DNA of 64,000 bases from Rebecca billardiae RCC1528 (lineage: Eukaryota > Protista > Haptophyta): positions 2,666,001 through 2,730,000 of the forward strand of contig OZ251230.1 in NCBI GenBank assembly GCA_965240325.2. Direction: 5' to 3'. The notes under the pieces are model-generated. The model saw only the letters and a program-made list of their open reading frames with translations. It was not told where the DNA came from and made no database searches. The position numbers and the translations under genes were made by a program. Below, in pieces: positions 1,860 to 64,000 of the stretch. The stretch's first letter is position 1; the number at the start of each line of letters is the position of its first letter.

Positions 1860-4800
1860 CTAGCGCCGCTTGTCCCGGTCCTTGAGCAGCAGCGTCACGT
1901 ACGCCAGCAGCCGCACGCACCCGCCGATCGCCGCGAGCGAGCGCACGGCGACGCGCACGCCCTCGCACCGCGCGAGCGGCGCGTCTGGGCCGCAGAGCTG
2001 GCCGTACCGGTACCGATCCATCAGCTCCATCGCGGTGAGCAGCGTGAGCCCGCCCTGCGCACCGAGCGGCGAGTACACGCCGAGGAAGAGCCAGTCGACC
2101 ATCCAGCGGCAGAACGAGCCGCGCGAGAGCAGCCCGAACGCGGCGGGCAGGTCTCGCAGCAGCGGAAAGCAACCCGTGAACATAACGGACAGGAGCGCGG
2201 CCACGCCCGCCGTCACCTGTCGGTTGGACGTGACGGTGAGCGAGATCAGGTGCCCCCAGCCCTCGCCCGCCCACTGCGCGCCCAGGCAGGCGCAGTACAT
2301 GCCGCCGAAGCCGAGCCCGCCCGGCCGCACGAGCGCGTGGAACGGCGCCAGCAGCGCGTACGGGTACAGCAGCGTGAGCGGCAGACACGCGAGGTTCTTG
2401 CCGAGCAGGTAGGCGAGAGGCGAGAGCCCGGCGCGCGACTCGCGCCAAAAGTTGGCGCGCTCCGCGCCGAAGATGTCGAGCGACACCTGCATGGACGAGA
2501 TGGCGAGCGCGATCGTGAGCAGCGTGAAGCACTGCTGGTACGCCGTGTTGAGCGTGAGCACGGCGTACCGCGCGCCCAGCGACATCGGGTTGGCCGCGCC
2601 GACCGCCGCCACCTTGTCGGCCACGTCTGGATAGAGCAGCCCCAGCAAGGAGCCCGCGACCAGGCTGAGGAAAAGGTTCTTGAGGATGTTGGGCGTGTCG
2701 CGCGCGTGCTGCGTGAGCGAGCGCGCGGTGAAGAGGCGCAGCTGCTGCAGCGGGCCCGCGATCGTGCGCCCGCCGCGGTGGCGCAGCCGGCGCGCCATCC
2801 GCGTGAGGCGCGGCGGCGCGGGCGGCGCCGCCACGGGCGGCGGTGGCGCTGATGGCGGCGGCGGGCGCGGCGCGGCGCCGCCGCCCGCGCCGTCGGCCGA
2901 CGACGCGGCGGCGCCGCCCGCGCCGGCCCGCTGCGGCTGCTGCTGCGACGGCGGCGGCGGCGGCGTGGCCGAGTGTGCCGCGACCCCGCCGCCAGCCGCG
3001 CCGGGGTAGGGCGGGGGCGTGGCGCCGCCCGCGCTCGCAAACGGTGTGGGCACCGCGCCGCTCAGCGCGGCGGCGCGCTTTGCCGCCTCGCCGCGCACGC
3101 TCGGCGCCTCGGCCTCACGCGCCTCCGCCGCGCCGCCGCCGGCGTTGCAGCCGCCGGCCCCGCCCCCCGGCGCGCCGCCCACCGCGCCGCCGCGCCCGCC
3201 CTCGCCCTCGGCCAGCTCGCTCGCCTCGCGCGCCGCGCGCGCGTGCTGCGCCATCAAGGCCTCGTCAAAATGCACGTGGCTCACAATGTCCATCACCGTG
3301 TCTGCCGCGTTCTCGTTGGGCGGGAAGCGGAAGCCGAGGGCCTCGAAGTGGGGCTGCACGCGCGAGGCGGGGCCCATGTACGCGGTGGAGCCGGTGGGCG
3401 CGAGCAGCAGCAGGTCGTCCAGCAGCTGCGTGCGCGAGCGGGCGCGCACACCAAGAGAGGGGGGCGGGCGGGCGCGGCGCGGCGGCGGCGGCGGGCGGCG
3501 GCGGTCGGCTCGTGAGCGCGGCGGGCGCGCGCGCGCGCGCGCGGGGGGGCACCCTGACCGTGGGAGCGGCGCGCCCAGCGCACGGCGCGCGCACCTCGAA
3601 GACCTGCGCGCGCGGCTGGTGCAGCACCGCGACCACCGTCACGCCCAGCGCCGCGTATCGCTTCAGACTCTGCACCACCTCCAGCGCAGCCGTCGAGTCA
3701 AGGCCTGAGGTCGGCTCGTCGAGAAAGAGGAGGACCGGGTCCGCGACGAGCTCGAGGCCGATGTTGACGCGCTTGCGCTGGCCGCCCGAGATGCCGCGCT
3801 GGCCCTCCGACTCGCTGCCCACCAGCGCGTGCTTCACGTCGTCCAGCCTGCGCGCGGAGGCGGTGAGGGGTGTGAGGGGTTAGGGTTAGGGGTTAGGGTT
3901 AGGGGTTAGGGTTAGGGTTAGGGGGACGGTTGGACGCGCGCGCGCCGCGCCCTTGGCGTGCGCCCCGGCGTGCGCACGCGCGGCCCACGCACCGCCCGCC
4001 CCCACCCGCACCCGGCGCGCTTCGCCACGCCGCCGCCCGCGCCGTGCCGCAGCCCACGCCGCCGCCCGCGCCCGCGGCTACTCACTTGAGTACGTCGGTT
4101 ACGACATCCACGTACTCCGCGACCTCTGCGGAGCTCAGGTCGCGCGGCAGCCGCATGCGCGCGGAGAAGCGGAGGAGCTCCTGCACGGAGAGGACGGAGA
4201 GCATCACGTCCTCCTGCGGGACGAAGCCGGTCAGCTTGTGCAGCGAGCGCACGTCCGCGTGCACCGCGCCGCACCCGTTCACCCACAGCCGCCCGCGCCC
4301 GCCGCTCGGCCGGAGCTTGCCGGAGAGTAGACCGAGCAGCGTCGACTTGCCGCAGCCGGAGGGCCCCATGATGGCGGTGAGCCGGCCGGGGCGGAGCACG
4401 CCGTGCGCGCCCGAGAGCACCGTCGTGCCGTCCCCCAGCGAGAACTCGAGCCCCTCGAACGCCAGCTCGATCAGCAGCGTCGGATCGTGCACCGCCGCCA
4501 TCGCGCAGTCAAAGCTCGCCTCGAGCGCGCTCGAGAGCGCGGGCGCGACGGGCACGCCCGAGGCGGCGGCGGCGGCGCGCGCGCCGAGGCGGGCGAGGAG
4601 CTTGCGGCGGTACCGCCGCTCGCGCAGCCACGCGCGCACGCGCCGGTGGCACGCGCCAAGCAGCACCCAGCCCGCCGCGAGGCCGAGCGCGCCGTACGCG
4701 CAGTCGCACAGCCTCTCCCACGATTTGATCGACGCGTCAACCGACGGGAGCTGCGGCTTGGGCAGACATGCGGCGGCGGCGAGCGCGCGCGTGCGCGCGG

Positions 4801-48216: not shown

Positions 48217-50464
48217 CTAGCCCTTGAAGATGAAGCGCACCGCGTCGAGCGCGGCGCGCGCGCCGAGCACGAGCGAGGACTCGGCGAGCTTGGCGAGCGT
48301 GCCGCTGCGGACGAGCGCGCGCGCCGCCCACGGCGCGAGCTGCCCGAGCGCGAGGAGCAGCGGCTCCTCGACGGCGAACGTGCCGATCAGCGCCGCGGCC
48401 CACGACGCGAGCATCGCCTCGGTGCGCTCGCGGCCGAACAGCCGTCCGTACACGATCACGAGCGCGCACAGCCCAGCGTACATGCCCAGCATGGCCGCCC
48501 ACGCGAGGGGCGAGCGCGCCCACGGCGGCGGCGGCGGGCACGGGCAGAGCACGCGCGCCCACTCGGCCGCGCGCCGCTCCGCCGCCTTCTGCCGCGCGTA
48601 CCACACCACCATCTCGAGCTCGTCCACGCGCAGGTCGGCGTCGAGATCGAGATCTCGCAGCAGCCGCCGCCGCTCGTGCGGCAGCAGCGGGTCGCCCAGC
48701 TCGGCCATGATCAGCCCGACGCCCGCCTCGTCCACGCGCCCGTCGCCCGTCGAGTCGCAGCGCGAGAAGGCGGCGCGCAGCGCGGAGAGCTCGGCGGCGG
48801 TGAGCTCGGACTGCGCGCGGTGCAGCGACGAGCTCTGCGCGCGCGACAGCGCGCCCGAGCGGCGCGAGAACGACGGCGGCGGCGCCGCCCGCTGCTGCTC
48901 GGCGGGCGCGGCGGCGGCGGCGCCGGCCGCGGCCGGCGGCGGCGGGCTGGGCGCGTCGCCGGGGCTGGCGCTCGAGCCGCTGCGGCGTGCGTCGAGTGGC
49001 GGCGGCGGCGCGGGCGCGGCGCTCGCGGGCGCGGCCGGCGGCGACGTCGCGCGGCGCTCGCGCCGTTGCGGCGAGCGCGGCGAGGGCGGCGTGAGCGAGT
49101 CGGTCGACGCGCTGCCGCGGCCGAGGGCGGGCGGGCGGCGCGGCCCGACGGCGGCGGGTGCGGGCGCGGGCGCGGCGGCCGGGTCCGGCGCGGGCGCGGC
49201 CGCGCTCGTCGCGGGGGCGCCCGCCGTGGCGGCCGCGCGGCCGCGCGGCGGCGACGCCGGCGGCGGCGACGGCGGCGGCGACGGCGCGCCCGCCGGCGCC
49301 GCCGCGCCCGCCTCGGCCTCGGGCGCGGCGGCGGCGGGCGCGGCGGTGTCAAGCGCGGCGGGCGCGCGCGCGGCGAGCGCGCGCACGGGCGTGATGCGGC
49401 TGAGCGAGCCGCCCCCCAGCACGGGCGCGGCGACGAGTCTGCGCGGCGGCGGCGGCGCGGCGGCGGGCGCGGCACCGCCCGAGCTGCTCCCGCCGCCGCC
49501 GCCGCCGCGCGAGGCCGTGCTGCGGCTGCTGCTGCTGCTGCCGCCGCCGCGCGCCGCCGAGCCGGCCGAGCGCGGCCGAGGCCGCGCGGGGAGAACGTAC
49601 GGCTGCTGGAAGCCTGGCGGCGCCGGCCGGCCCGCCTCGGCCTGAGCGGCGGCGGGCGCCGCGCCGGCGCCCTCCTCGTCGCCCGGCGCGATCTCAGCGC
49701 CGCGCGCGCGCGCCGCGCCGCCCGCGACGAGCGCGCCGCCCGACTGCAGCGGCGCGACGATGCCGCAGCCAATCGTGGGCACGTCAGGCACACGCACGCG
49801 CCGCGCGGCGCTGCCAGGGCGGCCCCCACCGCCGCCGCTGCCCGGCCGGCCGCCGCGCGCGCCCGCGTGCTGCTGCTGCGCCGCCGCCGGCCCTGCGCAC
49901 GCCTCCGGCGCTGACTCCTCGTGCCGTGGGCTGAGGCGCGCGGGCGGCGGCGCGGGCCCGCCACCGCCGCCTCCAACGCTCGAGCGCGCCGAGACCGCGG
50001 AGCGCAGCGTCGAGGCGGAGGCGGAGGACGAGAGCGGCGCCGCGGCCGTGCTGCCGCGCGAGGAGCCGCAGCCCGGCTTGCGCACGGCCGGCGGGCCGCC
50101 AAAGCGCCGCGCGCCGGCTGGGTAGCCCTGCGTGCTCGCGCCCGCCCGCCCGCCGTCGCCCTCGCCGTCGCCGTCGCCCTCACCCCGCCCATACCCGCCG
50201 CCGCCGCCGCCACCACCTCGCATCTTCCCGGCGAGCGCGAGCGCGCTCCCCATCGCCACCATCTCGCGCGCGCGCGCGCGCGAGCGCGCGTCCGCGGCGA
50301 GCGCGCCGCTGAGGTGCTCGCGCATGCCGCGGTACAGCCGCCACGCGGGCAGCGCGCGGCCGTCGTGCCGCGCGAGGTGCCACGCGCCCTTGAACGCCCA
50401 CAGCGCGGGCAGCCCGAGCGCGCACGCGAGCAGCGCGTACAGCAGCACGCTCAGCAGCGGCACG

Positions 50465-50514
<50 letters not shown>

Positions 50515-51152
50515 CTCCTCCTGCGAGTGGAGCATGCACTCGAGCGCAGCCTGCAGCGCGAGCGTGTTGAAGAGGCTCTGCACCAGCTCGGCGCGGCGCA
50601 GCGCGCGCTCGGGCCGCGCGAACAGCAGCGCGAGCAGCGTGTGCTGGTCCGCGACCGCCTCGAGCACGGCGCGCGCGCGCTCGAGCGGGCTCGCGCCGCG
50701 CCGCCCGCCGCGGCGCGCGCCAGAGCCGCCGGCCCTCGTCGAGAAGCGCCGGCCGAGGTCGTGGTGCTCGGCGATCTCCTGCGCGGCGCTGCGCGCGGGC
50801 GACCAGACGGACGAGCTCCGGCGCATCGGCGAGCGCGAGGGCGGCGAGCGCGAGGGCGGCGAGTGCGAGCGCGAGCGGGGCGCACGGCGCGCAGGCAGCT
50901 CGGCCGGCGAGGCGCCGCCGCTGCCGCCGCGCGCGGGCGCGGCGCCGTCCGCCCGCCGCTGCGCGCCCGCCGCCTGCGCGCCCGCCGACGCCTCGGGCGC
51001 CGCCGCCACCGGCTCCTCCTCCGCGCAGCTGCTCTCCACCACCGCCCTCGCGCCCAGGTATGCGTCGAGCTGCGCCGAGCGCAGCTCGGCGCCCGGCGCG
51101 CCGGAGGGCGGCGCCGAGCCGGCGTCGCGCGCGCAGCACGGCGCGGGCGCGG

Positions 51153-51183
<31 letters not shown>

Positions 51184-54100
51184 CTTGCGCGCGCGCACGC
51201 GCTCGACGGTCGTCGCCGGCTGCGCGCCGGCCGCGGCGCTCGCGCGCGCGCCGGCCGCGCCCGCGCCGAGCTCGCCGCCCAGCCCGCTGTCGAGCGTGCC
51301 GGTGCCGCGCCGGCTGCCGAGCGGCGAGCGCGCGCGCGAGGCTGCGGGCGAGCGCGCGCGCGAGCGCGCGCTCGGCGGCGAGCGCGGCGCGGACGAGCTG
51401 CGCGAGGGCGGCGCGGGCGAGCCGCGCCGGCTGCGCCGGCTGTAGCTGCCGCCGCCGCCGCCGCCGCCGCCCACGCTCAGCCGCCCGCCGCCGCCGCCCG
51501 GCCCGCGGCTGCCGCTCCCGTCGCCCAGCCCGGACGTGGCCAGTCCGGAGGACGTGGCCAGTCCGGACGTGGCCCTCTCAGATTCGTACCAGCGCGCGTA
51601 CTCGCGCAGAGCGCGCCGGTCGGCCGCGGCGGCGAGGAGGAGGCAGAGGCCGTTGAGCCCGCTCAGCAGGTACACCAGCCGGTAGATCGTCGGGTTCTCG
51701 CGGAGGCCCTCCGAGGGCGTGGCGAGCACCGCCGCGCCCTCGGCGGCGCTGAACGTGTTGAGACGCACGGACGCCGCCTCCTCCGCCGCCGCCTCGCGGC
51801 TGGCGGGCACGGAGAGCGCGGCAAAGTCGGTGAGGTGCGTGCACGCGCAGTAGAGCAACGACGGCTCGGCGCCGTCGGGCGGCGCGCCCAGCGTCGTGCA
51901 CCCCTCCGCCGACCACTCGCCCCGCGCCTCGTCCCACCAGTGGCACGCGTCCGCGCGGCCGCACTCGCGCCCGCGGTACGGCGGCTCGCACGCGCAGCCG
52001 CGCAGCCCGCCGCCCAGCTCGACGCACGCGCCGCGCGCGTTGCACGGCGCGGCCATGCCCAGCGCGATCTCGGCGCCGCCGTCGGCGCACGACGGCGCGG
52101 GCTCCACCGCCGGCGGCGCGTACCCCGGCAGCCCGACCAGCAGCGGCTCGCGCAGCCCCGAGATTGCAATCTCGGCGCCGGCCGTCGGGTCGCGCAGCTG
52201 CGCGCGCAGCACGCCCGTGCGCAGAGGGCCGAGCAGCGCGCCGTCGCTCTGGTTGGCGGGCTCGGCATGCACGTTCGGCCCGAAGGCGATGAGCACCACG
52301 TCGACCGGCGCGTCCGGCGCCGGCGCGCCGCCGCCGGACTCGGCGCCGGCCTGCGCGGCCCACAGCGAGGCCGGCAGTGCGAGCGCGCCGCCGCCGCCCG
52401 CGCCGTCCAGCGCCGCGCGCTCTGCCGCGAGCTCGGCCGCGGTGCGCCGCGCCACGCTCACGTTGACGCGCGCGGAGGTCGCCTCGACCGGCAGCTCGCC
52501 CGGCACGGCGCCGGCGAGCAGCGCGAGCGCCAGGCCCGACGCCGCCTCGAGCGCCGCGCCGCCCAGCGCCACCGCCTCCTCCGCCGTGAGCGCGCCGCCG
52601 CCGCCGCCGCCGGGCGCGCCGAGCGCGCTGTCGAGCGCGCCCAGCAGCGCGGCCGCCGTGCCGGCGTCGACGCCGTCGGCCGCGGACGCGGCGGCGAGCG
52701 CGGCCACGTGCCCGAGCCCGGCGGCGCGCGCCGGCGCGTCGAGCGCCACCGGCGCGCCGAGCGCGGCCGCGAGCGCCGCCGCCGACTGCGCGCGCGCCTC
52801 GGCGGTGGGCGGCGCGACCGCGGCCGCCTCGAGCGCGGTGAGCCCCACGATCGTCGAGACGAGCGCCGAGCCGTTCGCCGCGGCGGCCGCGGCGGCCGCG
52901 GGGTCGGCGAGCGTCTGCGCCAGCCCGTCGAGCAGCTGCATCGCCTCCGCGTGGTCGGCGCGGTCGATCGCCGCACGCGCGCGCGCGAGCGCGCCCGCCA
53001 GCGCCGCGGCCGCCGCGGCCGCGGAGGCTCCCAGCTCGGGCGAGCGCACGCGCACGGCGGCCGAGGCGGTGGCGCGCGCGCCGAGCGCGTCCGTGACGCG
53101 CACGGACAGCGTGCGCGCGCCGCCCGGCAGCAGCGCGCTGCCGAGCGCGGACGCCCCGGCGAGGCCGAGCGGCGTCGGCGCGCCGCCGTCGGCGGCCCGG
53201 TGCGAGAAGGCGTAGCTGAGCGGCAGCTGATCCGACACCCAGCCGACCGCGTGCAGCGCGTACGCCGTCACCAGCGCCACGCCGCCCTCGGCGGGCGAGA
53301 CGCGCAGCGCGCCGCCGTGCGGCGGCCGGCCGATCGGCACGAAGATCGACGCGGACGCGGAGGGCGCGGCGGCGGGCGCGCCGCCGCCGCCGCCTCCGAG
53401 CGGCGTGACGGTCAGCTCGAACGCGTACGTGGCGCCGGCCGCGAGCGCGCCGCTGCGGAAGGCGAGCGTGTGCCGCGACCCGCCGGTGGTCGTGACGGCG
53501 GCCGTGTCCTCCAGCTCGAGCCCCGACGGCTCGAGCCCGCCGTCGTCGGCGCGGAGGAACGCGCGCCAGCGCAGCGCGTACGGCCCAGCCGCGGAGCCGT
53601 TGGCGGCCGCCGCGGCAGAGTCAGACTCGGCGAGGAGCGCCGTGCTGATGGCGAGGCGCTCGCTCGGCCGCGCCCACTCGGCGGCGTACGAACCTCGGCG
53701 CAGCGGCGCGAAGACGATCGTCGGGATGGGCGCGGCCACGAGCGACACGCGCACGGACGCGCTCGCGCCCGCCGGCAGCGCGGCGGCGGCGGCCGCCGCC
53801 GCCGCCGTCGCCGCCGACGACGCCGACGCGCCGCCCGGCGTTGCAGTGGCGGGCGGCCGCGCGCTCACCGCGAGCGTGACCACGTACTCGCCCGGGCTGA
53901 GGTCGCCCGGCTGCAGCCGCAGCGACGAGGCGTTGGTGCGCACGCTCGGCGGCAGGGGCACCGCGCTGCTGCCGTTGCCCGCCGCGCCCGCGCCGCCGCC
54001 CGGCGCAGCGGCCGCGACGACCGTCCACGCGAACGCCAGCCCGTCGGCCGAGCCCGTGTTTGGGTCGAGCGTGGACGAGCCGTCGATGGCGAGCGGCCGG

Positions 54101-57100
54101 TCCGCGCGCGCGCTGCGGTCGCCCCCCGCGATCGTCGCGCGCAGCGGCAGCTGCGCCACGTCCACGCGCACGCGCGCGCTACCCGCCGCCGCCGGGTCAG
54201 CCTCCATCTGCGCCGTCACCTCCAGCTCGTAGCTGTGCAGCGGCGCGAGGGCGTACGGGGAGAGTACGAGCGCGGCGCCTGCCGCCTCGGGCGCGCCGTC
54301 GAGCGCGGAGCGCGCGACGCTCGCGTGCGCGGGCGCGCCGCTCGCGCTGTGCGTCACGCCGAGCAGCGACCAGCGGAAGCGCACGCGCGCGTCCGCGTCC
54401 TCCCAGCAGCTCGCGACGCGCGCGCCGCCCGACAGCAGCGTCGCCGCGCCCGGCCGCACGGCGCGCACGGCCGGCCCCGCGACCGAGACGGTCGGCTTCG
54501 CGTCCGCGCGCGGCGGACGGTGCACGGTGTGCAGCGCAACCGCCGAGACCGAGCCGAGCATGCGCGAGCGCACGCGCAGCGCGAACGCCAGCCGGTGCGC
54601 GCCCGGCGCGAGCGTGCCGAGCGCGTGCAGCGCCACCGCCGCGCCCGTGTGCGCCGCCAGCAGGCCGTTGAGCGCCGCCGCCTCGGCCGCGGAGATGCCG
54701 AGGCTGCGGCTGCGGTCGAGCGCCCACTCAAAGGACAGCCCCGCCGCGCCGCCGCCCGACGAGGCGGAGCCGTCGAGCGCGAGGTCGGCGTCCGGGCAGC
54801 GCGAGAGCGCGCCGGGGCCGCTGAGCGCCGCGACAGGCGGCGCGCAGCCCAACGGCTCGGCGCACGGCGCGTCCGCGTCGATGGCGGCGGCGCCGGCGGC
54901 GCCGAGCGCGGACGGGTCGCACGGCGGCGCGCACACGGAGGGCGCCGGCCGCACCGCGCCCTCGCGCAGCACCAGCGCCGAGCCCGGGCGCAGCGCGGTG
55001 CCCGCGCCCAGCTGCACGACGAGCGCCGACGCGTCACGCCAGTAGCACGTGGGCGGCCGCGCGCCGTCGGCAGCGGACCCGCCGACCAGCGCGAGCGTCG
55101 CGTCGTCGAGGGCGGGCGCGCACGGGCCGACGCCCGCGCCCATGCGCGCGCGGTCGGTCGGCTGCGCGTCGAACTGGAGGAGCACGGAGGTGGCGCTGCC
55201 GTCGAGCGCCGCGCTGAGCAGCGTGGGCGCGTGCGCGCCGATGAAGGTGAACGACACACCGCCGTCCTCCTCCCCCCCCTCCGACGGCGCGGGCTCGAAC
55301 TGCTGCCCGTTGAGCGAGACGCGCACCGGCACGGGCGCGCCGCCCGCCACGCCGTGGCTCGCCGTCGCGACGACGAGCGTGTCCGTCGCCACGGCGGGCG
55401 AGGGCGCGAGCGCGGCCCCAAACGCCACGCGCAGCAGCTGCAGCGGACCTTCAGGGCCCAGCCCCGCGCCGCCCAGTGCGCCAAACCCGACACCCGTGAT
55501 GGCGGTCGCGTCGCCCGCGCCGCCCTGCGTCGGCACGATCGAGCTCACGCGCGGAGGCGCGTAGTAGTGGAAGCGCACGCCGTCGGCGGTGGTCGTGTGC
55601 GCGGTGCCGTTGCCCAGCGAGAGCTCGAGCGAGACCGACGTCGCGCCGCCGAGCGCGGGCGCGGGCTCGGACGCCGGCAGCGGCGGCAGTGTGCAGCGCG
55701 CGCGCGCGCTGCCGTCCGCGCCCGCGGGCAGCATGCCCGCGCGCGCCGCGCAGCCGCCGGCCTCGGCCGCGCCGCCGCCGCCACCGCGCAGCACGCAGCA
55801 CAGCTGGCCCTCGCCGAACTCGGCAAAGCCAACGCCCACGAGCGTCACCACCGTGCCGCCGCCCACCGGCCCCGCGGGCGGGTGCAGCGCGGCCACGCGC
55901 ACCGCGCCCATCTCGTACAGCGAGATTGCGATCTCGTCGCCAAACAGCGAAGGCGCGGAATACGCGCCGCCGTCCAGGCGCAGGCGGACAACATACCGGC
56001 CGGCGGGCAGCGCGGAGCCGTCGGCCGCGGCGTGGGGCACCGCGCACGCCGCGGCGCGCGCGCTCAGCACGACGGCGGCCGTGCTCGCCTCCGCGACGCC
56101 CGCGCCGCCGTCCGCGCGCGAGAACGCGCACGACGCGGCGCCGACGCCGCCCGCGCCGACGCCGCCGCCGTCGGTCGGCCCGACGAAGCCCTCGCCGGCG
56201 AGAGTGAGCGTGCACTCCGCGCCGAGCGGCGCGCCGAGCGGCTCGGCGCTCTGCACCACCGCGCGGAGCACCGGCGGCGGCGGCGGCGCGGGCGGCGGCG
56301 CAGGCGGCGGCGCGGGCGGCGGCGGCGGCGGCGGGCGCGGCGGCGGGCTCGGCGGCGGGCTCGGCGGCGGGCTCGGCGGGCTCGGCGGCGGGAATGGCTC
56401 TGCGCGCGGCGGCGGCGGCGGGGCTGGCGGGGGCGAGGGCGGCGGCGGCGACGGCGGCGGCGCCGGTGGCGGCGGGCTCGGCGGCGGGCTCGGCGGCGGC
56501 GAGGGCGGCGGGCTCGGCGGCGGGCTCGGCGGCGGGCTCGGCGGCGGGCTCGGCGGCGGGCTCGGCGGCGGGCTCGGCGGCGGCGGGCTCGGCGGCGGCG
56601 AGGGCGGCGGCGTGGGCGGCGGCGAGGGCGGCGGGCTCGGCGGCGGCGCGGGCGGCGGGCTCGGCGGCGGGCGCGGCGGCGGGCTCGGCGGCGGGCTCGG
56701 CGGCGGGGTTGGCGGCGGGGTGGGCGGCGGCGACGGCGGTGGCGACGGCGGCGGCGAGGGCGGCGGGCCCGGCGGCGGCGAGGGCGGCGGGTTGGGCGGC
56801 GGGCTGGGCGGCGGCGAGGGCGGTGGCGAGGGCGGCGGGGGGCTCGGCGGCGGGCTCGGCGGCGGCGAAGGCGGCGGCGACGGCGGCGGCGGGCTCGGCG
56901 GCGGGCTCGGCGGCGGCGATGGCGGCGGCGAGGGCGGCGTGCCGGGCGGCGGCGGGCTGGGCGGCGGGCTGGGCGGCGGGCTGGGCGGCGGGACTGGCGG
57001 CGGGCTCGGCGGCGGACTCGGGGGCGGCGAGGGCGGCGGGCTCGGCGGCGGCGAGGGCGGCGGGCGCGGCGGCGGCGAGGGCGGCGGGCGCGGCGGCGGC

Positions 57101-60100
57101 GAGGGCGGCGGGCGCGGCGGTGGCGAGGGCGGCGGGCTCGGCGGCGGCGAGGGCGGCGGGCGCGGCGGCGGCGAGGGCGGCGGGCTCGGCGGCGGCGACG
57201 GAGGCGGGCTCGGCGGCGGCGACGGCGGCGGGCGCGGCGGCGGCGACGGCGGCGGCGAGGGCGGCGGCGAGGGCGGCGGCGGGCTGGGCGGCGGGCTGGG
57301 CGGCGGGCTCGGCGGCGGGCTGGGCGGCGGGCGGGGCGGTGGGGATGGCGGCGGCGACGGCGGCGGCGACGGCGGCGGCGACGGCGGTGGGCTCGGCGGT
57401 GGGCTCGGCGGTGGGCTCGGTGGCGGGCTCGGCGGCGGCGGGCTCGGCGGCGGGCTCGGCGGCGGGCTCGGCGGCGGGCTCGGCGGCGGCGACGGCGGCG
57501 GAAACGGCGGCCGCGACGGTGGCGGCGAGGGTGGCGGGCGTGGGGGCGGGCTTGGCGGCGGCGAGGGGGGTGGCGAGGGCGGCGGGCTCGGCGGCGGCGA
57601 GGGCGGCGGCGTTGGCGGCGCGCGTGGCGGTGGCGACGGCGGCGGCGAGGGCGGCGGGCCCGGCGGCGGCGGGCTCGGCGGCGGGCTCGGCGGCGGGCTC
57701 GGCGGCGGGCTCGGCGGCGGGCTCGGAGGCGGCGGGCTCGGCGGCGGGCTCGGCGGTGGCGCCGGCGGCGGGCTCGGCGGCGGCGAGGGCGGCGGGCTTG
57801 GCGGCGGGCTCGGCGGCGGGCTTGGAGGTGGCGGGCTGGGAGGCGGGCTCGGCGGCGGGCGCGGCGGCGGCGAGGGCGGCGGGCCGGGCGGCGGGCTGGG
57901 CGGCGGGCTGGGCGGCGGGGAAGGCGGCGGGGAAGGCGGCGGCGACGGCGGCGGGGAAGGCGGCGGCGAGGGCGGTGGCGAGGGCGGCGGGACGGGCGGT
58001 GGGGACGGCGGCGGGGATGGCGGCGGGAGCGGTGGAGGCGAGGGCGGCGGCGAGGGCGGCGGCGAGGGCGGCGGCGACGGCGGCGGCGACGGCGGTGGGC
58101 TCGGCGGTGGCGATGGCGGCGGGCTCGGTGGCGGCGAGGGCGGCGGCGACGGCGGCGGCGAAGGCGGCGGGAACGGCGGCTGGAACGGCGGCGGCGACGG
58201 CGGCGGCGACGGCGGCGGGCTCGGTGGGGGCGAAGGCGGTGGGGAGGGCGGCGGCGACGGCGGCGGGCTGGGCGGCGGCGGGCTGGGCGGCGGGCTCGGA
58301 GGCGGGCTCGGCGGTGGGCTGGGTGGTGGGCGCGGTGGCGGCGAGGGCGGCGGCGAGGGCGGCGGCGAGGGCGGTGGCGAGGGCGGCGGCGGGCTGGGTG
58401 GCGGGCTGGGCGGCGGCGAGGGCGGCGGGCTGGGCGGCGGGCTTGGTGGCGGGCTTGGCGGCGGGCGTGGCGGCGGCGACGGAGGCGGTGACGGCGGTGG
58501 GGGGCTTGGTGGGGGGCTCGGCGGTGGACTCGGAGGCGGGGACGGCGGCGGAGCGGGCGGCGGCGAGGGCGGCGGCGACGGCGGCGGGAAAGGCGGCGGC
58601 GAGGGCGGTGGGCTCGGCGGTGGTGATGGCGGTGGCGAGGGCGGCGGGCTCGGTGGTGGCGGGCTCGGCGGCGGGCTCGGCGGCGGCGATGGCGGCGGGC
58701 TTGGAGGCGGCGAGGGCGGCGGGCTCGGCGGCGGCGACGGCGGCGGCGATGGCGGCGGGCTGGGCGGCGGCGGGCTCGGTGGCGGGCTCGGCGGCGGCGA
58801 GGGCGGCGGGCTCGGCGGCGGGCTCGGCGGCGGCGAGGGCGGCGGCGAGGGCGGCGGCGAGGGCGGCGGCGAGGGCGGCGGCGAGGGCGGCGGCGATGGC
58901 GGCGGCGATGGCGGCGGGCTCGGCGGCGGCGGGCTCGGCGGCGGGCTGGGCGGCGGCGAGGGCGGCGGGCTCGGCGGCGGGCTCGGCGGCGGCGAGGGCG
59001 GGGGGCTCGGCGGCGGGCTCGGTGGCGGCGAGGGCGGCGGCGAGGGCGGCGGGCTCGGCGGTGGCGATGGCGGTGGCGATGGCGGCGGGCTCGGCGGCGG
59101 CGACGGCGGCGGAAAGGGCGGCGGGCTCGGCGGCGGTGATGGCGGCGGCGATGGCGGCGGGCCTGGCGGCGGCGGGCTTGGCGGCGGGCTCGGCGGCGGC
59201 GACGGCGGCGGGCTCGGCGGCGGCCTCGGTGGCGGGGAGGGCGGAGGGCGTGGCGGCGGGCTCGGTGGCGGCGAGGGGGGCGGCGAGGGTGGCGGCGACG
59301 GCGGTGGTGTTGGAGGCATGCTCGGCGGCGGTGACGGTGGCGGCGATGGCGGCGGGCTGGGAGGCGGTGGGCTCGGTGGCGGGCTCGGCGGCGGCGATGG
59401 CGGCGGGATGGGTGGTGGGCTCGGCGGTGGGCTCGGCGGCGGGCTGGGCGGCGGTGATGGCGGTGGCGACGGCGGCGGGCTCGGCGGCGGTGATGGCGGC
59501 GGCGATGGCGGCGGGCTCGGCGGCGGCGGGCTCGGCGGCGGGCTCGGCGGCGGCGACGGCGGCGGGCTTGGCGGCGGTGACGGCGGCGGCGAGGGCGGAG
59601 GGCTCGGCGGCGGACTAGGCGGCGGCGATGGCGGCGGACTCGGTGGCGGACTGGGCGGCGGCGAGGGCGGCGGGCTCGGTGGCGGTGCTGGCGGCGGCGA
59701 TGGCGGCGGGCTTGGCGGCGGCGGGCTCGGTGGCGGACTGGGCGGCGGCGACGGCGGCGGGCTGGGCGGTGGGCTGGGCGGCGGCGAGGGTGGAGGGCTC
59801 GGCGGCGGGCTGGGCGGCGGCGATGGCGGCGGGCTCGGTGGCGGCGACGGTGGTGGCGACGGCGGCGGGCTCGGCGGCGGTGATGGCGGCGGCGAGGGCG
59901 GCGGGCTCGGCGGCGGCGGGCTCGGTGGCGGACTCGGCGGCGGCGACGGCGGCGGGCTGGGCGGTGGGCTGGGCGGCGGCGAGGGCGGGGGGCTCGGCGG
60001 CGGGCTGGGTGGCGGCGAGGGTGGCGGGGTCGGCGGCGGCGACGGCGGTGGTGATGGCGGAGGGCTCGGCGGCGGTGATGGCGGCGGTGATGGCGGCGGG

Positions 60101-63100
60101 CTGGGCGGCGGCGGGCTCGGTGGCGGCGAGGGCGGCGGCGACGGCGGCGGGCTCGGCGGCGGAGACGGCGGCGGCGAGGGCGGAGGGCTCGGCGGCGGGC
60201 TTGGGGGTGGCCATGGCGGCGGGCTCGGTGGCGGTGACGGCGGTGGCGACGGCGGCGGGCTCGGCGGCGGTGATGGCGGCGGGCTCGGCGGCGGACTGGG
60301 CGGCGGCGATGGCGGCGGACTCGGTGGCGGCGACGGCGGTGGCGACGGTGGCGGGCTTGGCGGCGGTGATGGCGGCGGCGAGGGCGGCGGGCTGGGCGGC
60401 GGCGGGCTGGGTGGCGGGCTCGGCGGCGGCGAGGGCGGCGGGCTCGGCGGCGAGGACGGCGGCGGCGACGGCGGAGGGCTCGGCGGCGGTGATGGCGGTG
60501 GCGATGGCGGCGGACTTGGCGGCGGCGACGGCGGTGGCGATGGCGGAGGGCTCGGCGGCGGTGACGGCGGCGGTGATGGCGGCGGGCTGGGCGGGGGCGG
60601 CGACGGCGGCGGACTCGGCGGCGGCGACGGCGGCGGCGACGGCGGCGGGCTCGGCGGCGGCGATGGCGGCGGGCTCGGTGGCGGACTCGGGGGCGGCGAG
60701 GGCGGCGGAGTCGGTGGCGGCGAAGGCGGCGGTGACGGCGGTGGGCTCGGCGGCGGTGATGGCGGCGGCGAGGGCGGCGGGCTGGGTGGCGGTGGGCTGG
60801 GTGGCGGGCTCGGCGGCGGCGAGGGCGGCGGGCTCGGCGGCGGGGACGGCGGCGGCGACGGCGGAGGGCTCGGCGGCGGCGATGGCGGTGGCGATGGCGG
60901 CGGCGATGGCGGCGGCGACGGCGGTGGCGACGGCGGAGGGCTCGGCGGCGGCGACGGCGGCGGCGATGGCGGCGGGCTGGGCGGGGGCGGCGACGGCGGC
61001 GGACTCGGCGGCGGCGACGGCGGCGGCGACGGCGGCGGGCTCGGCGGCGGTGAGGGCGGCGGGCTCGGCGGTGGACTGGGGGGCGGCGAGGGCGGCGGGC
61101 TCGGCGGCGGCGACGGCGGCGGCGAGGGCGGCGGGCTCGGCGGGGGTGATGGCGGCGGTGATGGCGGCGGGCTTGGCGGCGGCGGGCTCGGTGGCGGGCT
61201 CGGCGGCGGCGAGGGCGGCGGGCTGGGCGGCGGGCTGGGCGGCGGCGAGGGCGGCGGGCTTGGCGGCGGGCTTGGTGGCGGCGAGGGTGGCGGGCTCGGC
61301 GGCGGCGACGGCGGCGGCGACGGCGGCGGGCTCGGCGGCGGTGATGGCGGCGGCGAGGGCGGCGGGCTGGGCGGCGGCGGGCTCGGCGGCGGGCTCGGCG
61401 GCGGCGACGGCGGCGGGCTGGGCGGTGGGCTGGGCGGCGGCGAGGGCGGAGGGCTCGGCGGCGGAGCGGGGGGCGGCGAGGGCGGCGGGCTCGGTGGCGG
61501 CGACGGCGGTGGCGACGGCGGAGGGCTCGGCGGCGGCGATGGCGGTGGCGATGGCGGCGGCGATGGCGGCGGCGACGGCGGTGGCGACGGCGGAGGGCTC
61601 GGCGGCGGCGACGGCGGCGGCGATGGCGGCGGGCTGGGCGGGGGCGGCGACGGCGGCGGACTCGGCGGCGGCGACGGCGGCGGCGACGGCGGCGGGTTCG
61701 GCGGCGGCGAGGGCGGCGGGCTCGGCGGTGGACTGGGGGGCGGTGAGGGCGGCGGGCTCGGCGGCGGCGACGGCGGCGGCGAGGGCGGCGGGCTCGGCGG
61801 GGGTGATGGCGGCGGTGATGGCGGCGGGCTTGGCGGCGGCGGGCTCGGTGGCGGGCTCGGCGGCGGCGAGGGCGGCGGGCTGGGCGGCGGGCTGGGCGGC
61901 GGCGAGGGCGGCGGGCTTGGCGGCGGGCTTGGTGGCGGCGAGGGTGGCGGGCTCGGCGGCGGGGACGGCGGCGGCGACGGCGGCGGGCTCGGCGGCGGCG
62001 ACGGCGGCGGCGAGGGCGGCGGGCTTGGCGGCGGCGGGCTTGGCGGCGGGCTCGGCGGCGGCGACGGCGGCGGGCTGGGCGGTGGGCTGGGCGGCGGCGA
62101 GGGCGGAGGGCTCGGCGGCGGAGCGGGGGGCGGCGAGGGCGGCGGGCTCGGTGGCGGCGACGGCGGTGGCGACGGCGGTGGGTTCGGCGGCGGTGATGGC
62201 GGAGGCGAGGGCGGTGGGCTGGGTGGCGGTGGGCTGGGTGGCGGACTCGGCGGCGGCGACGGCGGCGGGCTCGGCGGCGGCGACGGCGGCGGTGAGGGCG
62301 GAGGGCTCGGGGGCGGCGATGGCGGTGGCGATGGCGGTGGCGATGGCGGCGGCGACGGCGGTGGCGACGGCGGGGGACTTGGCGGCGGCGAAGGTGGCGG
62401 TGATGGCGGCGGGCTGGGCGGCGGCGGCGACGGCGGCGGGCTCGGCGGCGGCGACGGCGGCGGGCTTGGCGGCGGGCTTGGCGGCGGCGAGGGCGGCGGG
62501 CTCGGCGGCGGACTGGGCGGCGGCGAGGGCGGCGGACTCGGCGGCGGCGACGGCGGCGGCGACGGCGGAGGGCTCGGCGGCGGCGATGGCGGCGGCGATG
62601 GCGGCGGGCTTGGCGGCGGCGGGCTCGGAGGCGGGCTCGGAGGCGGCGAGGGCGGCGGGCTGGGCGGCGGGCTGGGCGGCGGCGAGGGCGGAGGGCTCGG
62701 CGGCGGCGATGGTGGCGGCGAGGGCGGCGGGCTCGGCGGCGGTGACGGCGGTGGCGACGGCGGCGGGCTCGGCGGCGGTGATGGCGGCGGCGAGGGCGGC
62801 GGGCTGGGCGGAGGCGGGCTCGGTGGCGGGCTCGGCGGCGGCGAGGGCGGCGGGCTGGGCGGCGGTGACGGCGGCGGCGACGGCGGCGGGCTGGGCGGCG
62901 GACTGGGCGGCGGCGAGGGCGGAGGGCTCGGCGGCGGCGACGGCGGTGGCGACGGCGGCGGGCTCGGCGGCGGTAATGGCGGCGGAGATGGCGGCGGGCT
63001 CGGCGGCGGTGGGCTTGGTGGCGGGCTCGGCGGCGGCGACGGCGGCGGGCTGGGCGGCGGGCTGGGCGGCGGCGAGGGCGGCGGGCTGGGCGGCGCGCGT

Positions 63101-64000
63101 GGTGGCGGCGATGGCGGCGGGCTCGGCGGCGGCGACGGCGGCGGCGACGGCGGCGGGCTCGGCGGCGGTGATGGCGGCGGCGACGGCGGCGGGCTGGGCG
63201 GCGGCGGGCTCGGTGGCGGGCTCGGCGGCGGCGACGGCGGCGGGCTGGGCGGCGGTGACGGCGGCGGCGGGCTGGGCGGCGGACTGGGCGGCGGCGATGG
63301 CGGAGGGCTCGGCGGCGGCGACGGCGGTGGCGACGGCGGCGGGCTCGGCGGCGGTGATGGCGGCGGTGATGGCGGCGGGCTGGGCGGCGGCGGGCTCGGC
63401 GGCGGGCTCGGCGGCGGCGATGGCGGCGGGCTGGGCGGCGGGCTGGGCGGCGGCGAGGGCGGCGGGCTTGGCGGCGGGCTTGGTGGCGGCGAGGGTGGCG
63501 GGCTCGGCGGCGGGCTCGGCGGCGGCGAGGGCGGAGGGCTCGGCGGCGGCGACGGCGGCGGCGAGGGCGGCGGGCTTGGCGGCGGCGGGCTTGGCGGCGG
63601 GCTCGGCGGCGGCGAGGGCGGCGGGCTGGGCGGCGGGCTGGGCGGCGGCGTGGGCGGAGGGCTAGGCGGCGGCGATGGCGGCGGCGAGGGCGGTGGACTG
63701 GGCGGTGGCGACGGCGGCGGGCTTGGCGGCGGGCTCGGCGGCGGCGACGGCGGCGGCGATGGCGGCGGGCGTGGCGGCGGTGGGCTTGGCGGCGGGCTTG
63801 GCGGCGGCGAGGGCGGCGGGCTTGGCGGCGGGCTGGGCGGTGGCGAGGGCGGAGGGCTAGGCGGCGGCGAGGGCGGCGGCGAGGGCGGCGGACTCGGTGG
63901 CGGCGACGGCGGTGGCGACGGCGGCGGGCTCGGCGGCGGCGACGGCGGAGGGCTGGGCGGCGGGCTTGGGGGCGGCGGGCTTGGGGGCGGGCTTGGCGGC
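48217..64000 (-). CDS. Giant polycystin-1/REJ-like membrane protein with extensin-like Ser-Pro3 stalk (5'-partial, over 5,200 aa in window)
   Basis: SPPP repeats, IPT/TIG-like units (LHPPAGPVGGGTVVTLVG, VRVSLNGQQF), PKD/REJ-like units (LDGSASS, IDGSSTLDP, PPHGGALRVSP..G..LVT.Y), EGF-like unit, GPS (CHWWDE...WSAEGC...CACTHLTDF), TM segments and an EF-hand pair. The repeat phase is unbroken from 59319 to the window end, so the ORF-track start at 59319 is an internal Met. Confidence 0.85.
56275..64000 (-). repeat. Coding (SPPP/QPPP/RPPP)n array over 7.7 kb with higher-order duplications
   Basis: 12/15-bp units; a block at about 60850-61510 recurs at +657 bp. Confidence 0.95.

What the first reader, a model, noticed from the sequence alone, without database searches (positions are those of the whole stretch)
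48217..64000. Giant receptor: extensin-like stalk over 2,500 aa on a polycystin-1-like REJ/GPS body
Seen: one uninterrupted frame of over 15.7 kb with (SPPP)n, IPT/TIG-like, PKD/REJ-like, EGF-like, intact GPS (HL|T at about 51830), TM segments resembling the first polycystin-1 helices, and a stop with no six-TM channel domain and no evident PLAT domain. Established: Ser-Pro repeats form hydroxyproline-glycosylated polyproline-II rods in volvocine wall proteins and agglutinins, and GPS sites autocleave. At about 0.3 nm per residue the visible stalk alone would approach 0.8 micrometre. Inference: a very long, cleavable surface tether or mechanosensor, possibly a flagellar hair, scale-anchoring, haptonema or mating adhesion component.
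Basis: partly seen in the sequence, partly recalled or inferred. Interest (0 to 1): 0.78.

Follow-up and report, generated by a model that had tools for sequence, protein, structure and literature searches.

The report
Giant stalked channel-less polycystin-1-like receptor
A very GC-rich pavlovophyte-type alga appears to encode a surface protein of about 6,400 residues: a propeller head on a Ser-Pro3 rod about one micrometre long, anchored by the self-cleaving front half of a polycystin-1-type receptor with no ion-channel half. It is one of about 90 such genes in this genome, a family I found described in no paper.

Summary
The minus-strand frame is open from window 63999 to the stop at 48217. 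It runs 2,073 nt past the window end as one 17.9-kb exon.

- **Rod:** a 3,233-residue (SPPP)n array, 2,576 residues of it in the window. Codon patterns show selection on the protein.
- **Body:** TIG, REJ (Pfam E 2e-28), then a GAIN domain with an EGF-like insert and an intact GPS (HL|T at 51829-51837). The model's best fold matches are adhesion-GPCR GAIN domains.
- **Anchor:** five TM helices. Their best structural match among 48,161 chains is polycystin-1 TM1-5 (Z 12.7, borderline for a helical bundle).
- **Absent:** no PLAT and no channel domain.
- **Head:** four small exons beyond the window add a signal-like N-terminus and a seven-blade RCC1 propeller. The total is about 6,400 aa.
- **Mosaic:** the head is 95% identical to the tandem neighbour, while the base is closest to copies on other contigs.
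- **Relatives:** uncharacterised Diacronema lutheri and Pavlovales proteins, about 40% identical, without the rod.

The scan has already met this family many times on other DNA of this genome. Function is inferred: a tethered, cleavable adhesion or mechanosensing receptor. I have no expression data for this gene.

The parts
56272..64000 (-). In-window part (2,576 aa) of the (SPPP)n rod. The array continues beyond the window to ext 65970, 3,233 aa in all.
   Evidence: The array is 97.6% Ser+Pro. Ser is coded 346 times by AGY and 331 times by TCN. There are 77 distinct 12-mers for SPPP. SPPPP punctuation falls most often every 65 residues (195 nt).
54982..56271 (-). IPT/TIG-type Ig-like region directly after the rod. 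The Pfam TIG stretch is at 55306-55554.
   Evidence: TIG E 7.5e-7, 29.5 bits against a cut-off of 20.9; colinear with the TIG region of the D. lutheri protein P0151.
52933..54387 (-). REJ module.
   Evidence: REJ E 2.4e-28, 99.4 bits, best stretch 52933-53514. The extent was mapped through the alignment to the D. lutheri REJ at residues 2057-2508.
51802..53049 (-). GAIN domain: a helical subdomain A and a beta-sandwich subdomain B.
   Evidence: AF2 model with pLDDT 82.9 and pTM 0.77; top Foldseek hits are the GAIN domains of BAI3 (4dlo, E 5.7e-9), BAI2, latrophilin, CELSR1, GPR126 and CD97.
51961..52044 (-). EGF-like Cys-rich insert inside GAIN subdomain B.
   Evidence: EGF_2 is weak (E 0.45); the family profile also touches the EGF modules of reelin, selectins and Notch (E 5e-4 to 0.4).
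51814..51945 (-). GPS motif. The predicted autoproteolysis site is HL|T, between 51832 and 51831.
   Evidence: GPS E 2.1e-6, 28.6 bits against a cut-off of 22.5; profile match to the ADGRF1 GPS, E 3.9e-7. CxCxHLTxF is kept in 19 of 20 fetched paralogues, and the Cys, Trp, His and Leu columns are invariant.
51619..51693 (-). TM1, about 46 residues after the cleavage site. The stalk between them is conserved and has an invariant N-T-F.
   Evidence: (pLDDT 83-95).
50692..51540 (-). First cytosolic loop: low-complexity Gly/Ser/Arg/Ala sequence, predicted disordered. It occupies the position of the PLAT domain in polycystin-1.
   Evidence: pLDDT 30-47; no PLAT hit; poorly conserved among paralogues.
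50371..50595 (-). TM2 (50530-50595) and TM3 (50371-50457).
   Evidence: (pLDDT 70-95); 98-100% identical to the C37 copy.
48589..48822 (-). Cytosolic EF-hand pair between TM3 and TM4.
   Evidence: EF-hand_7 at 27.1 bits, just under the cut-off of 30; calmodulin-type chains (best RCaMP, 3u0k) at E about 1e-7; family profile against calmodulin-type chains at E down to 1e-25; fold matches to troponin C and calmodulin. By my reading, loop 1 has Gly instead of Glu at position 12, and loop 2 is D-x-D-x-D...E.
48223..48525 (-). TM4 (48436-48525), TM5 (48304-48432) and a conserved C-terminal helix ending in RFIFKG.
   Evidence: (pLDDT 85-96); the C-terminal motif is conserved across paralogues.
48217..48219 (-). 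Stop codon. The paralogues stop at the same conserved C-terminus.

Best explanation
Shown: the finding is the giant last exon (17,857 nt) of a five-exon gene on the minus strand. The gene encodes a membrane protein of about 6,400 aa.

From the N-terminus, the parts are:
- a signal-like N-terminus;
- a seven-blade RCC1 propeller, encoded by four small exons beyond the window plus the start of the last exon;
- a 3,233-residue (SPPP)n rod;
- a TIG region;
- a REJ module;
- a GAIN domain with an EGF-like insert and an intact GPS;
- a conserved stalk;
- five TM helices arranged like TM1-5 of polycystin-1, with a cytosolic EF-hand pair between TM3 and TM4.

There is no PLAT domain and no channel half.

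Inferred: the rod is hydroxylated and O-glycosylated into a stiff polyproline-II shaft of about 1 micrometre, which holds the propeller far from the membrane. The GAIN domain cleaves itself at HL|T, so the head, rod and REJ part stays bound non-covalently. Pull on the head, from a bound partner, surface or flow, would strain or shed that fragment and expose the conserved stalk as a tethered ligand to the five-helix core. The EF-hand pair would couple the core to cytosolic calcium, perhaps through one of the separate PKD2-type channels that the genome encodes.

The gene belongs to a family of about 90 genes. Heads and bases recombine within this family, probably through the repetitive rod DNA.
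For: - **Frame and coding:**. This frame has no internal stop where the other frames have 12-46, and GC3 is 0.96.
- **Rod under protein-level selection:**. Both Ser codon families are used about equally, third positions vary, and only about 2% of residues are neither Ser nor Pro.
- **Domains:**
- **GAIN fold:**
- **Five-helix core:**. The rank-1 match of 48,161 chains is polycystin-1 in 8z6b (Z 12.7, rmsd 5.7 A, 198 residues aligned, PC1 residues 3063-3610).
- **Head exons:**. RCC1_2 scores E 1e-19. All four introns are phase 2, inside the Cys codon of the CWG motif. The exon lengths sum to 19,203 nt = 3 x 6,401.
- **Purifying selection:**. It is concentrated on the GAIN/GPS region, the TM helices and the EF-hands.
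- **Family size:**
- **Mosaic history:**
- **Separate channel genes, and no PLAT or channel nearby:**
- **A homologue is transcribed in a related alga:** (an MMETSP transcript in the 90% cluster of a Pavlovales sp. CCMP2436 protein).
Against: - I have no transcript, protein or glycan data for this gene.
- The polycystin-1 match rests on a predicted model of a helical bundle, and Z 12.7 lies at the edge of what such bundles reach by chance. No sequence-level match to polycystin-1 TM1-5 was found, and Foldseek saw only the EF-hands.
- EF-hand loop 1 lacks the usual Glu at position 12.
- The array has no Tyr, so extensin-type cross-linking is not expected.
- RCC1 propellers are mostly intracellular in well-studied organisms.
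- The signal peptide was judged by eye only.
- About 1 kb of the array (window 61,400-62,400) is made of near-identical copies, so its exact length there depends on the assembly.
Confidence: 0.6

Rival explanations
1. The protein is mainly structural. The rods with their heads would form a surface coat or fine hairs, on the flagellum or the cell body. The REJ-GAIN-5TM base would then be only an anchor, with its cleavage site allowing shedding and renewal rather than signalling.
For: The rod makes up half of the protein and is kept at 2,300-3,200 aa in four copies. There are about 90 genes with such bases. No G-protein-coupling 7TM or channel domain is present. From my own knowledge, pavlovophytes carry fine non-tubular flagellar hairs.
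Against: The most conserved parts are the GPS and stalk, the TM helices and the cytosolic EF-hand pair. A passive anchor would not need these. One TM helix would be enough to anchor a protein, as in sea-urchin REJ1.
Confidence: 0.25
2. The family is chiefly a variable recognition repertoire, for gametes, prey, bacteria or viruses. Exchangeable heads would give the specificity, with the rod DNA serving as the recombination substrate. Mechanosensing would be secondary.
For: The gene has a three-part mosaic history. The head is 95% identical to the tandem neighbour but 75-80% to the C3 and C37 copies. The ectodomain base is 82-87% identical to C3 and C37, with no nucleotide match to the neighbour. 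The C-terminal fragment is 94% identical to C37 and 80% to C3. Earlier scan notes report other head types on the same base; I did not test those here.
Against: No ligand is known. I made no test for diversifying selection on the head. This reading is compatible with the best explanation rather than exclusive of it.
Confidence: 0.3
3. The array is not part of a protein, or its length is an artefact. It could be untranscribed, spliced out or inflated by assembly, or the gene could be a decaying pseudogene.
For: At 86-90% GC, stops are rare in any frame. In window 61,400-62,400, 80% of 36-mers are repeated within the array. Only 1 of 152 public homologues carries any Ser/Pro run, and that run is 40 aa.
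Against: Over 9.7 kb the array stays in frame with both the RCC1 blade before it and the TIG region after it. Non-synonymous units make up about 2%, against 18-49% variation at the third positions of the Pro codons. Ser uses two codon families that single mutations cannot interconvert. Most of the array is unique at the 36-mer level. Four independent loci have arrays of similar size. The body shows dN/dS below 1 and no stops.
Confidence: 0.07

Closest known systems
Polycystin-1 family (PKD1, PKD1L1-3, PKDREJ, sea-urchin REJ proteins)
   Same: It has a REJ module followed by a GAIN/GPS with HL|T, then a first TM helix. The predicted bundle of the first five TM helices has polycystin-1 residues 3063-3610 as its top structural match. 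Like sea-urchin REJ1 and REJ2, it has no channel half. That point about REJ1 and REJ2 is from my own knowledge and from the abstract of PMC1934368.
   Different: It has no PLAT in the first cytosolic loop, which is a disordered low-complexity loop instead. It has no TM6-11 or PKD_channel, and no PKD, LRR or C-type lectin repeats. It adds a cytosolic EF-hand pair between TM3 and TM4, a Ser-Pro3 rod of about 1 micrometre, and an RCC1 head.
Adhesion GPCRs (BAI, latrophilin, CELSR, ADGRG/F)
   Same: They share the GAIN fold and GPS motif. They also share the general logic of a large adhesive ectodomain joined to the membrane part through a self-cleaving domain and a tethered stalk.
   Different: The membrane part has five helices, not a class-B 7TM. 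The stalk is about 46 residues, which by my recollection is longer than the usual tethered agonist. No HormR domain is present.
Hydroxyproline-rich glycoproteins with Ser-Pro(n) shafts (plant extensins, volvocine wall proteins, Chlamydomonas sexual agglutinins)
   Same: It has long Ser-Pro3/4 repeats that would form a polyproline-II shaft with a globular head, as in the agglutinins. This comparison rests on my own knowledge.
   Different: The shaft is about ten times longer than in typical extensins. It has no Tyr cross-linking motifs. It is an integral multi-pass membrane protein, not a wall protein. The organism is a haptophyte-type alga, not a green alga or plant. Hydroxylation and glycosylation are untested.
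Diacronema lutheri KAG8459354.1 and KAG8462819.1; Pavlovales sp. CCMP2436 KAJ1635852.1 and KAJ1633484.1 (annotated as hypothetical, EF-hand or REJ domain-containing proteins)
   Same: They have the same TIG-REJ-GAIN/GPS-5TM base with an EF-hand pair. Identity is 38% over 1,619 aa to the first one. One of them matches an MMETSP transcript.
   Different: The public models have no Ser-Pro rod. KAG8459354.1 instead carries about 15 copies of a 90-aa repeat in front of the TIG region.

Membership tests
Polycystin-1 (PKD1) family | REJ module in the ectodomain | tested here: met
   Pfam REJ E 2.4e-28, 99.4 bits against a cut-off of 25.
Polycystin-1 (PKD1) family | GAIN domain with a GPS (HL|T) just before TM1 | tested here: met
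   Pfam GPS at 28.6 bits. GAIN fold with top Foldseek hits at E 5.7e-9. Motif conserved in 19 of 20 fetched paralogues. Cleavage itself is not testable here.
Polycystin-1 (PKD1) family | PLAT domain in the first cytosolic loop | tested here: not met
   No PLAT hit at E<=1. The loop is predicted disordered. The genome has only two PLAT loci, both elsewhere.
Polycystin-1 (PKD1) family | Eleven TM helices, the last six forming a TRP-like channel half | tested here: not met
   Five TM helices and then a conserved stop. No PKD_channel hit. None in this part of the contig.
Polycystin-1 (PKD1) family | Fold of the TM1-5 bundle | tested here: inconclusive
   Rank 1 of 48,161 chains is polycystin-1 in 8z6b (Z 12.7, rmsd 5.7 A, 198 residues aligned, 15% identity). 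That is borderline for helical bundles. No sequence-level match was found.
Adhesion GPCRs | GAIN/GPS domain | tested here: met
Adhesion GPCRs | Class-B seven-TM domain after the GPS | tested here: not met
   Five helices. No 7TM family in the Pfam scan.
Extensin-type hydroxyproline-rich glycoproteins | Ser-Pro(3-5) repeats | tested here: met
   664 SPPP and 58 SPPPP units among 793 units.
Extensin-type hydroxyproline-rich glycoproteins | Tyr-containing cross-linking motifs between the repeats | tested here: not met
   No Tyr among the 3,233 array residues.
Extensin-type hydroxyproline-rich glycoproteins | Prolyl hydroxylation and O-arabinosylation or O-galactosylation | not testable with these tools
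   This needs glycoproteomics. I did not search the genome for the modifying enzymes.
Pavlovophyte REJ-GAIN-5TM-EF-hand family (unnamed) | Colinear TIG-REJ-GAIN/GPS-TM1-TM2/3-EF pair-TM4/5 base with a conserved C-terminus | tested here: met
   At least 92 tail matches and 137 GAIN matches in this genome. Alignments A1 and A2. D. lutheri and CCMP2436 proteins have the same Pfam order.

The most novel reading that the evidence does not exclude
The family of about 90 genes may be a combinatorial surface-recognition and force-sensing system. Interchangeable heads would be displayed about a micrometre from the cell on Ser-Pro3 rods. The repetitive rod DNA would double as the recombination substrate that shuffles heads between bases. 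The bases would be a channel-less form of polycystin-1 with five helices and an EF-hand pair, signalling through calcium, perhaps with stand-alone PKD2-type channels. If so, the receptor half and the channel half of polycystin-1 can work as separate genes in a unicellular alga.
Probability: 0.3. Interest if true: 0.85.

Novelty: new variant of a known kind. Interest (0 to 1): 0.68.

Why it matters
The family joins three things that are usually studied apart: extensin-like polyproline rods, the self-cleaving GAIN/GPS switch of adhesion receptors, and the non-channel half of polycystin-1. It does so in a unicellular alga and in about 90 copies.

If the proteins are made as predicted, they are among the longest surface receptors known. 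They would offer a natural system for asking what the REJ-GAIN-TM1-5 half of polycystin-1 does without its channel half. They would also show how force is passed along a micrometre-long tether.

The mosaic history suggests that the rod DNA drives domain shuffling. On the practical side, public gene models of related algae lack the rods. Such genes may therefore be systematically truncated in annotations.

Tried and rejected
- **Word-index search for giant relatives.** I searched for proteins of 2.9-9.2 thousand aa with the REJ-GPS region and found nothing at E<=0.001. The full HMMER search later found relatives at about 40% identity, so that blank reflects the tool's limited sensitivity.
- **Sequence search against solved structures.** The single sequence and the family profile found only calmodulin-type EF-hands and adhesion-GPCR GPS motifs, and no polycystin-1.
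- **Foldseek on the C-terminal fragment model.** It found only EF-hand proteins.
- **ESM Atlas look-up of the C-terminal fragment.** It returned only an EF-hand cluster at score 0.75, which is no more than a lead.
- **Literature searches.** Four searches found no paper describing haptophyte REJ/GAIN receptors or Ser-Pro rods on them.
- **A possible full-length polycystin-1 type in this genome.** A PKD_channel hit inside a frame listed at 6,448 aa on C16 (5,125 aa of it fetched) turned out to be an ankyrin-repeat PKD2-like channel without a GPS. It is not a family member.
- **A compositional artefact.** I rejected the idea that the 15.7-kb frame is only a product of extreme GC content.
Full report
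**Observation**

The window is G000:C13:2,666,001-2,730,000 of a 72-Mb, 41-contig eukaryotic assembly with 66-90% GC. On the minus strand, 63999-48217 translates to 5,260 codons followed by one stop. The frame continues into the next 10 kb (L005) up to a stop at ext 66289, where ext means the window coordinate carried on past 64000.

At this GC content a long ORF proves little, because the opposite strand carries ORFs of 2,856 and 1,345 aa over the same DNA. Three other results show real coding:
- Over the 17.85-kb exon this frame has no internal stop, while the other five frames have 12-46.
- GC at codon positions 1, 2 and 3 of the non-repeat body is 0.80, 0.69 and 0.96.
- The body matches several curated protein families, described below.

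**The rod**

The array covers window 56272-63999 (2,576 aa) and runs on to ext 65970, 3,233 aa in all. It is 97.6% Ser+Pro, with 664 SPPP and 58 SPPPP units among 793 units, and it contains no Tyr. TRF reports periods of 12 and 195 nt. The SPPPP unit recurs most often every 65 residues.

The DNA is far more varied than the protein:
- Ser is coded 346 times by AGY and 331 times by TCN.
- Third positions of the Pro codons vary in 14-49% of units.
- Seventy-seven different 12-mers encode SPPP.
- Only about 2% of residues are anything other than Ser or Pro.

This pattern means selection acts on the protein in this frame.

Most of the array is unique at the 36-mer level. The exception is window 61,400-62,400, where 80% of 36-mers recur, so the exact length there depends on the assembly. 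Three paralogous loci have arrays of 3,121, 2,783 and 2,332 aa. At 0.31 nm per residue the rod would be about 1.0 micrometre long, of which 0.80 micrometre is in the window. That figure assumes a fully extended polyproline-II helix.

**The body**

Pfam on window:48220-56271(-) gives these hits:

| Family | E-value | Bits | Note |
|---|---|---|---|
| REJ | 2.4e-28 | 99.4 | above cut-off |
| TIG | 7.5e-7 | 29.5 | above cut-off |
| GPS | 2.1e-6 | 28.6 | above cut-off |
| EF-hand_7 | 5.5e-6 | 27.1 | cut-off is 30 |
| EGF_2 | 0.45 | 11.4 | weak |

No PLAT or PKD_channel appears at E<=1.

An AlphaFold2 model of residues 1075-1560 of the body was built on 24 sequences (pLDDT 82.9, pTM 0.77). Its top Foldseek hits are the GAIN domains of BAI3 (E 5.7e-9), BAI2, latrophilin, CELSR1, GPR126 and CD97. 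The family profile matches the ADGRF1 GPS at E 3.9e-7. H, L and T lie at 51835-51837, 51832-51834 and 51829-51831. The motif CxCxHLTxF is kept in 19 of 20 fetched paralogues. The Cys, Trp, His and Leu columns, and an N-T-F in the stalk, are invariant.

**The membrane part**

I modelled the last 1,200 residues of the body, starting four residues after the predicted cleavage site, on 25 sequences. Confident parts are the stalk and TM1, TM2 and TM3, and the EF-hand pair with TM4, TM5 and a C-terminal helix (pLDDT 70-96). Two long cytosolic loops are disordered (pLDDT 30-47).

Foldseek saw only EF-hand proteins. The search that does not lean on Foldseek ranked polycystin-1 of the PC1/PC2 complex (8z6b_A) first of 48,161 chains. 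That match has Z 12.7, rmsd 5.7 A and 198 aligned residues, pairing model 19-1158 with PC1 3063-3610. The tool warns that helical bundles can reach about Z 13 by chance. I therefore treat this as consistent with the polycystin-1 TM1-5 fold, not as proof. It gains weight from the REJ and GPS that sit in front of it.

The EF-hand pair is supported by phmmer hits to calmodulin-type chains (best E 6.6e-8, to RCaMP 3u0k) and by the family profile (E down to 1e-25). By my reading, loop 1 has Gly at position 12 and loop 2 is canonical.

**Gene model and head**

Upstream, beyond the window, are exons with RCC1 repeats (RCC1_2 E 1.2e-19). Reading the three frames and the splice contexts gives five exons on the minus strand:

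| Exon | Coordinates |
|---|---|
| 1 | L005:4235-3805 |
| 2 | L005:3630-3256 |
| 3 | L005:3027-2668 |
| 4 | L005:2545-2366 |
| 5 | L005:2073 to window 48217 |

All four introns (122-292 nt) are phase 2. Each sits inside the Cys codon of the CWG motif, with donor GTGCG and acceptor CGCAG. The exon lengths sum to 19,203 nt, exactly 6,400 codons plus the stop.

Seven WG-type blade motifs make one propeller. The N-terminus is basic and then hydrophobic, so it looks like a signal peptide, but I judged that by eye only. I searched the exons one by one by reference. I did not build or search the joined protein.

**Selection and family**

Against the copies on C37, C3 and C17, dN/dS is 0.49, 0.45 and 0.71. 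The GPS and stalk, TM2/3 and the EF-hand-TM4/5 parts are the most conserved, and the loops are the least.

The genome has at least 92 matches to the EF-hand-TM4/5 tail and at least 137 matches to the GAIN piece. They lie on nearly all contigs, mostly inside open frames of 5,000-12,000 aa. Both counts are lower bounds and include some double matches per locus.

The scan has already met this family many times on other DNA of this genome. I checked the claims that I reuse.

**Mosaic history**

| Segment | Tandem neighbour (C13) | C37 copy | C3 copy |
|---|---|---|---|
| Head, 2.3 kb with introns, from the start codon on | 95% | 78-80% | 75% |
| TIG-REJ-GAIN | no nucleotide match | 80-86% | 84-87% |
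| C-terminal fragment | no nucleotide match | 94% | 80% |

At the protein level the neighbour is 57% identical in the GPS region and 48% in the tail. Sharing of 36-mers switches from the neighbour to C37 near the start of the array. So at least two exchange events shaped this gene. One of them has its junction in or at the rod.

**Relatives elsewhere**

A full HMMER search of 1.84 billion representatives found 476 hits at E<=0.001, the best at 43% identity. The named ones are hypothetical, EF-hand or REJ domain-containing proteins of Diacronema lutheri and Pavlovales sp. CCMP2436. They show the same TIG-REJ-GPS-EF-hand order, and one is 38% identical over 1,619 aa. This supports a pavlovophyte origin for the window.

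One homologue is an MMETSP transcript, so the base is transcribed in a related alga. Only 1 of 152 public homologues has any Ser/Pro run, and that run is 40 aa. The D. lutheri protein carries a different repeat in front of the TIG region. More distant hits come from Chrysophaeum taylorii and a picozoan.

**Channel half**

The genome has at least a dozen strong stand-alone PKD_channel loci and only two PLAT loci, none of them near this gene. The one channel hit inside a very long frame is an ankyrin-PKD2-like channel without a GPS.

**How it most likely works**

The architecture is shown; the mechanism is inferred. The propeller would be held about a micrometre out on a glycosylated polyproline rod. 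GAIN self-cleavage would leave the head, rod and REJ part bound non-covalently. Pull on the head would strain or release that part and present the conserved stalk to the five-helix core. The EF-hand pair would link the core to cytosolic calcium, possibly together with separate PKD2-type channels.

A purely structural role as a coat or hair, and a role as a variable recognition repertoire, remain open. The recognition role is compatible with the main reading.

**Comparison and novelty**

The protein works like a cross between polycystin-1, an adhesion GPCR and an algal agglutinin. It fails two defining features of polycystin-1 (PLAT and the channel half) and one of adhesion GPCRs (the 7TM). I therefore file it as a new variant, not as a member of either family. 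Four literature searches found no description of it.

**Limits**

I have no expression, protein or glycan data for this gene. The folds are predictions from shallow alignments made mostly of paralogues.

Noticed in passing
L005:5492-10000 and onward (C13:2,735,495 to about 2,752,274), minus strand: A tandem paralogue lies directly upstream. Its RCC1 head and introns are 95% identical to this gene's head, its Ser-Pro array is 2,332 aa, and its base is clearly different (48-57% protein identity).
   Followed up: partly
L005:2074-3804 (ext 66074-67804), minus strand: All four head introns sit at the same place, phase 2 inside the Cys codon of the RCC1 CWG motif, with GTGCG donors and CGCAG acceptors. 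The exons may therefore have arisen by duplication of blade or blade-pair modules.
   Followed up: partly
window 61400-62400: In this stretch of the array, 80% of 36-mers recur elsewhere in the array, so these are recent higher-order repeat copies. It is the part of the assembly most open to collapse or expansion.
   Followed up: partly
G000:C37:33625-39198, C25:70645, C10:2857310, C3:1293932, C16:1416101, C18:663969: These family members lie in open frames of 10,980 to 21,132 aa, far longer than this gene. I did not examine whether the frames are real coding length or a product of GC content.
   Followed up: no
G000:C15:1266566, C21:340411, C20:1130519, C7:2129050, C3:259992, C3:391055 and others: The genome has at least a dozen strong stand-alone PKD2-type channel loci in frames of ordinary size. 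They are candidate partners for the channel-less receptors.
   Followed up: partly
L033:4624-9999 (C16:880623-885998), minus strand: This is an ankyrin-repeat PKD2-like channel (Ank_2, Polycystin_dom, PKD_channel) inside a frame listed at 6,448 aa open, of which I fetched 5,125 aa. It has no GPS and no Ser/Pro run.
   Followed up: yes
window 49921-58491 and 59628-63665, plus strand: ORFs of 2,856 and 1,345 aa lie antisense to the gene. They are by-products of the extreme GC content, not genes.
   Followed up: partly
P0151 (Diacronema lutheri KAG8459354.1), residues 1 to about 1450: In place of the rod and propeller, this homologue has about 15 copies of a roughly 90-residue repeat with a conserved LCYRF-type motif. 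Pfam named no family for it at E<=0.001.
   Followed up: no
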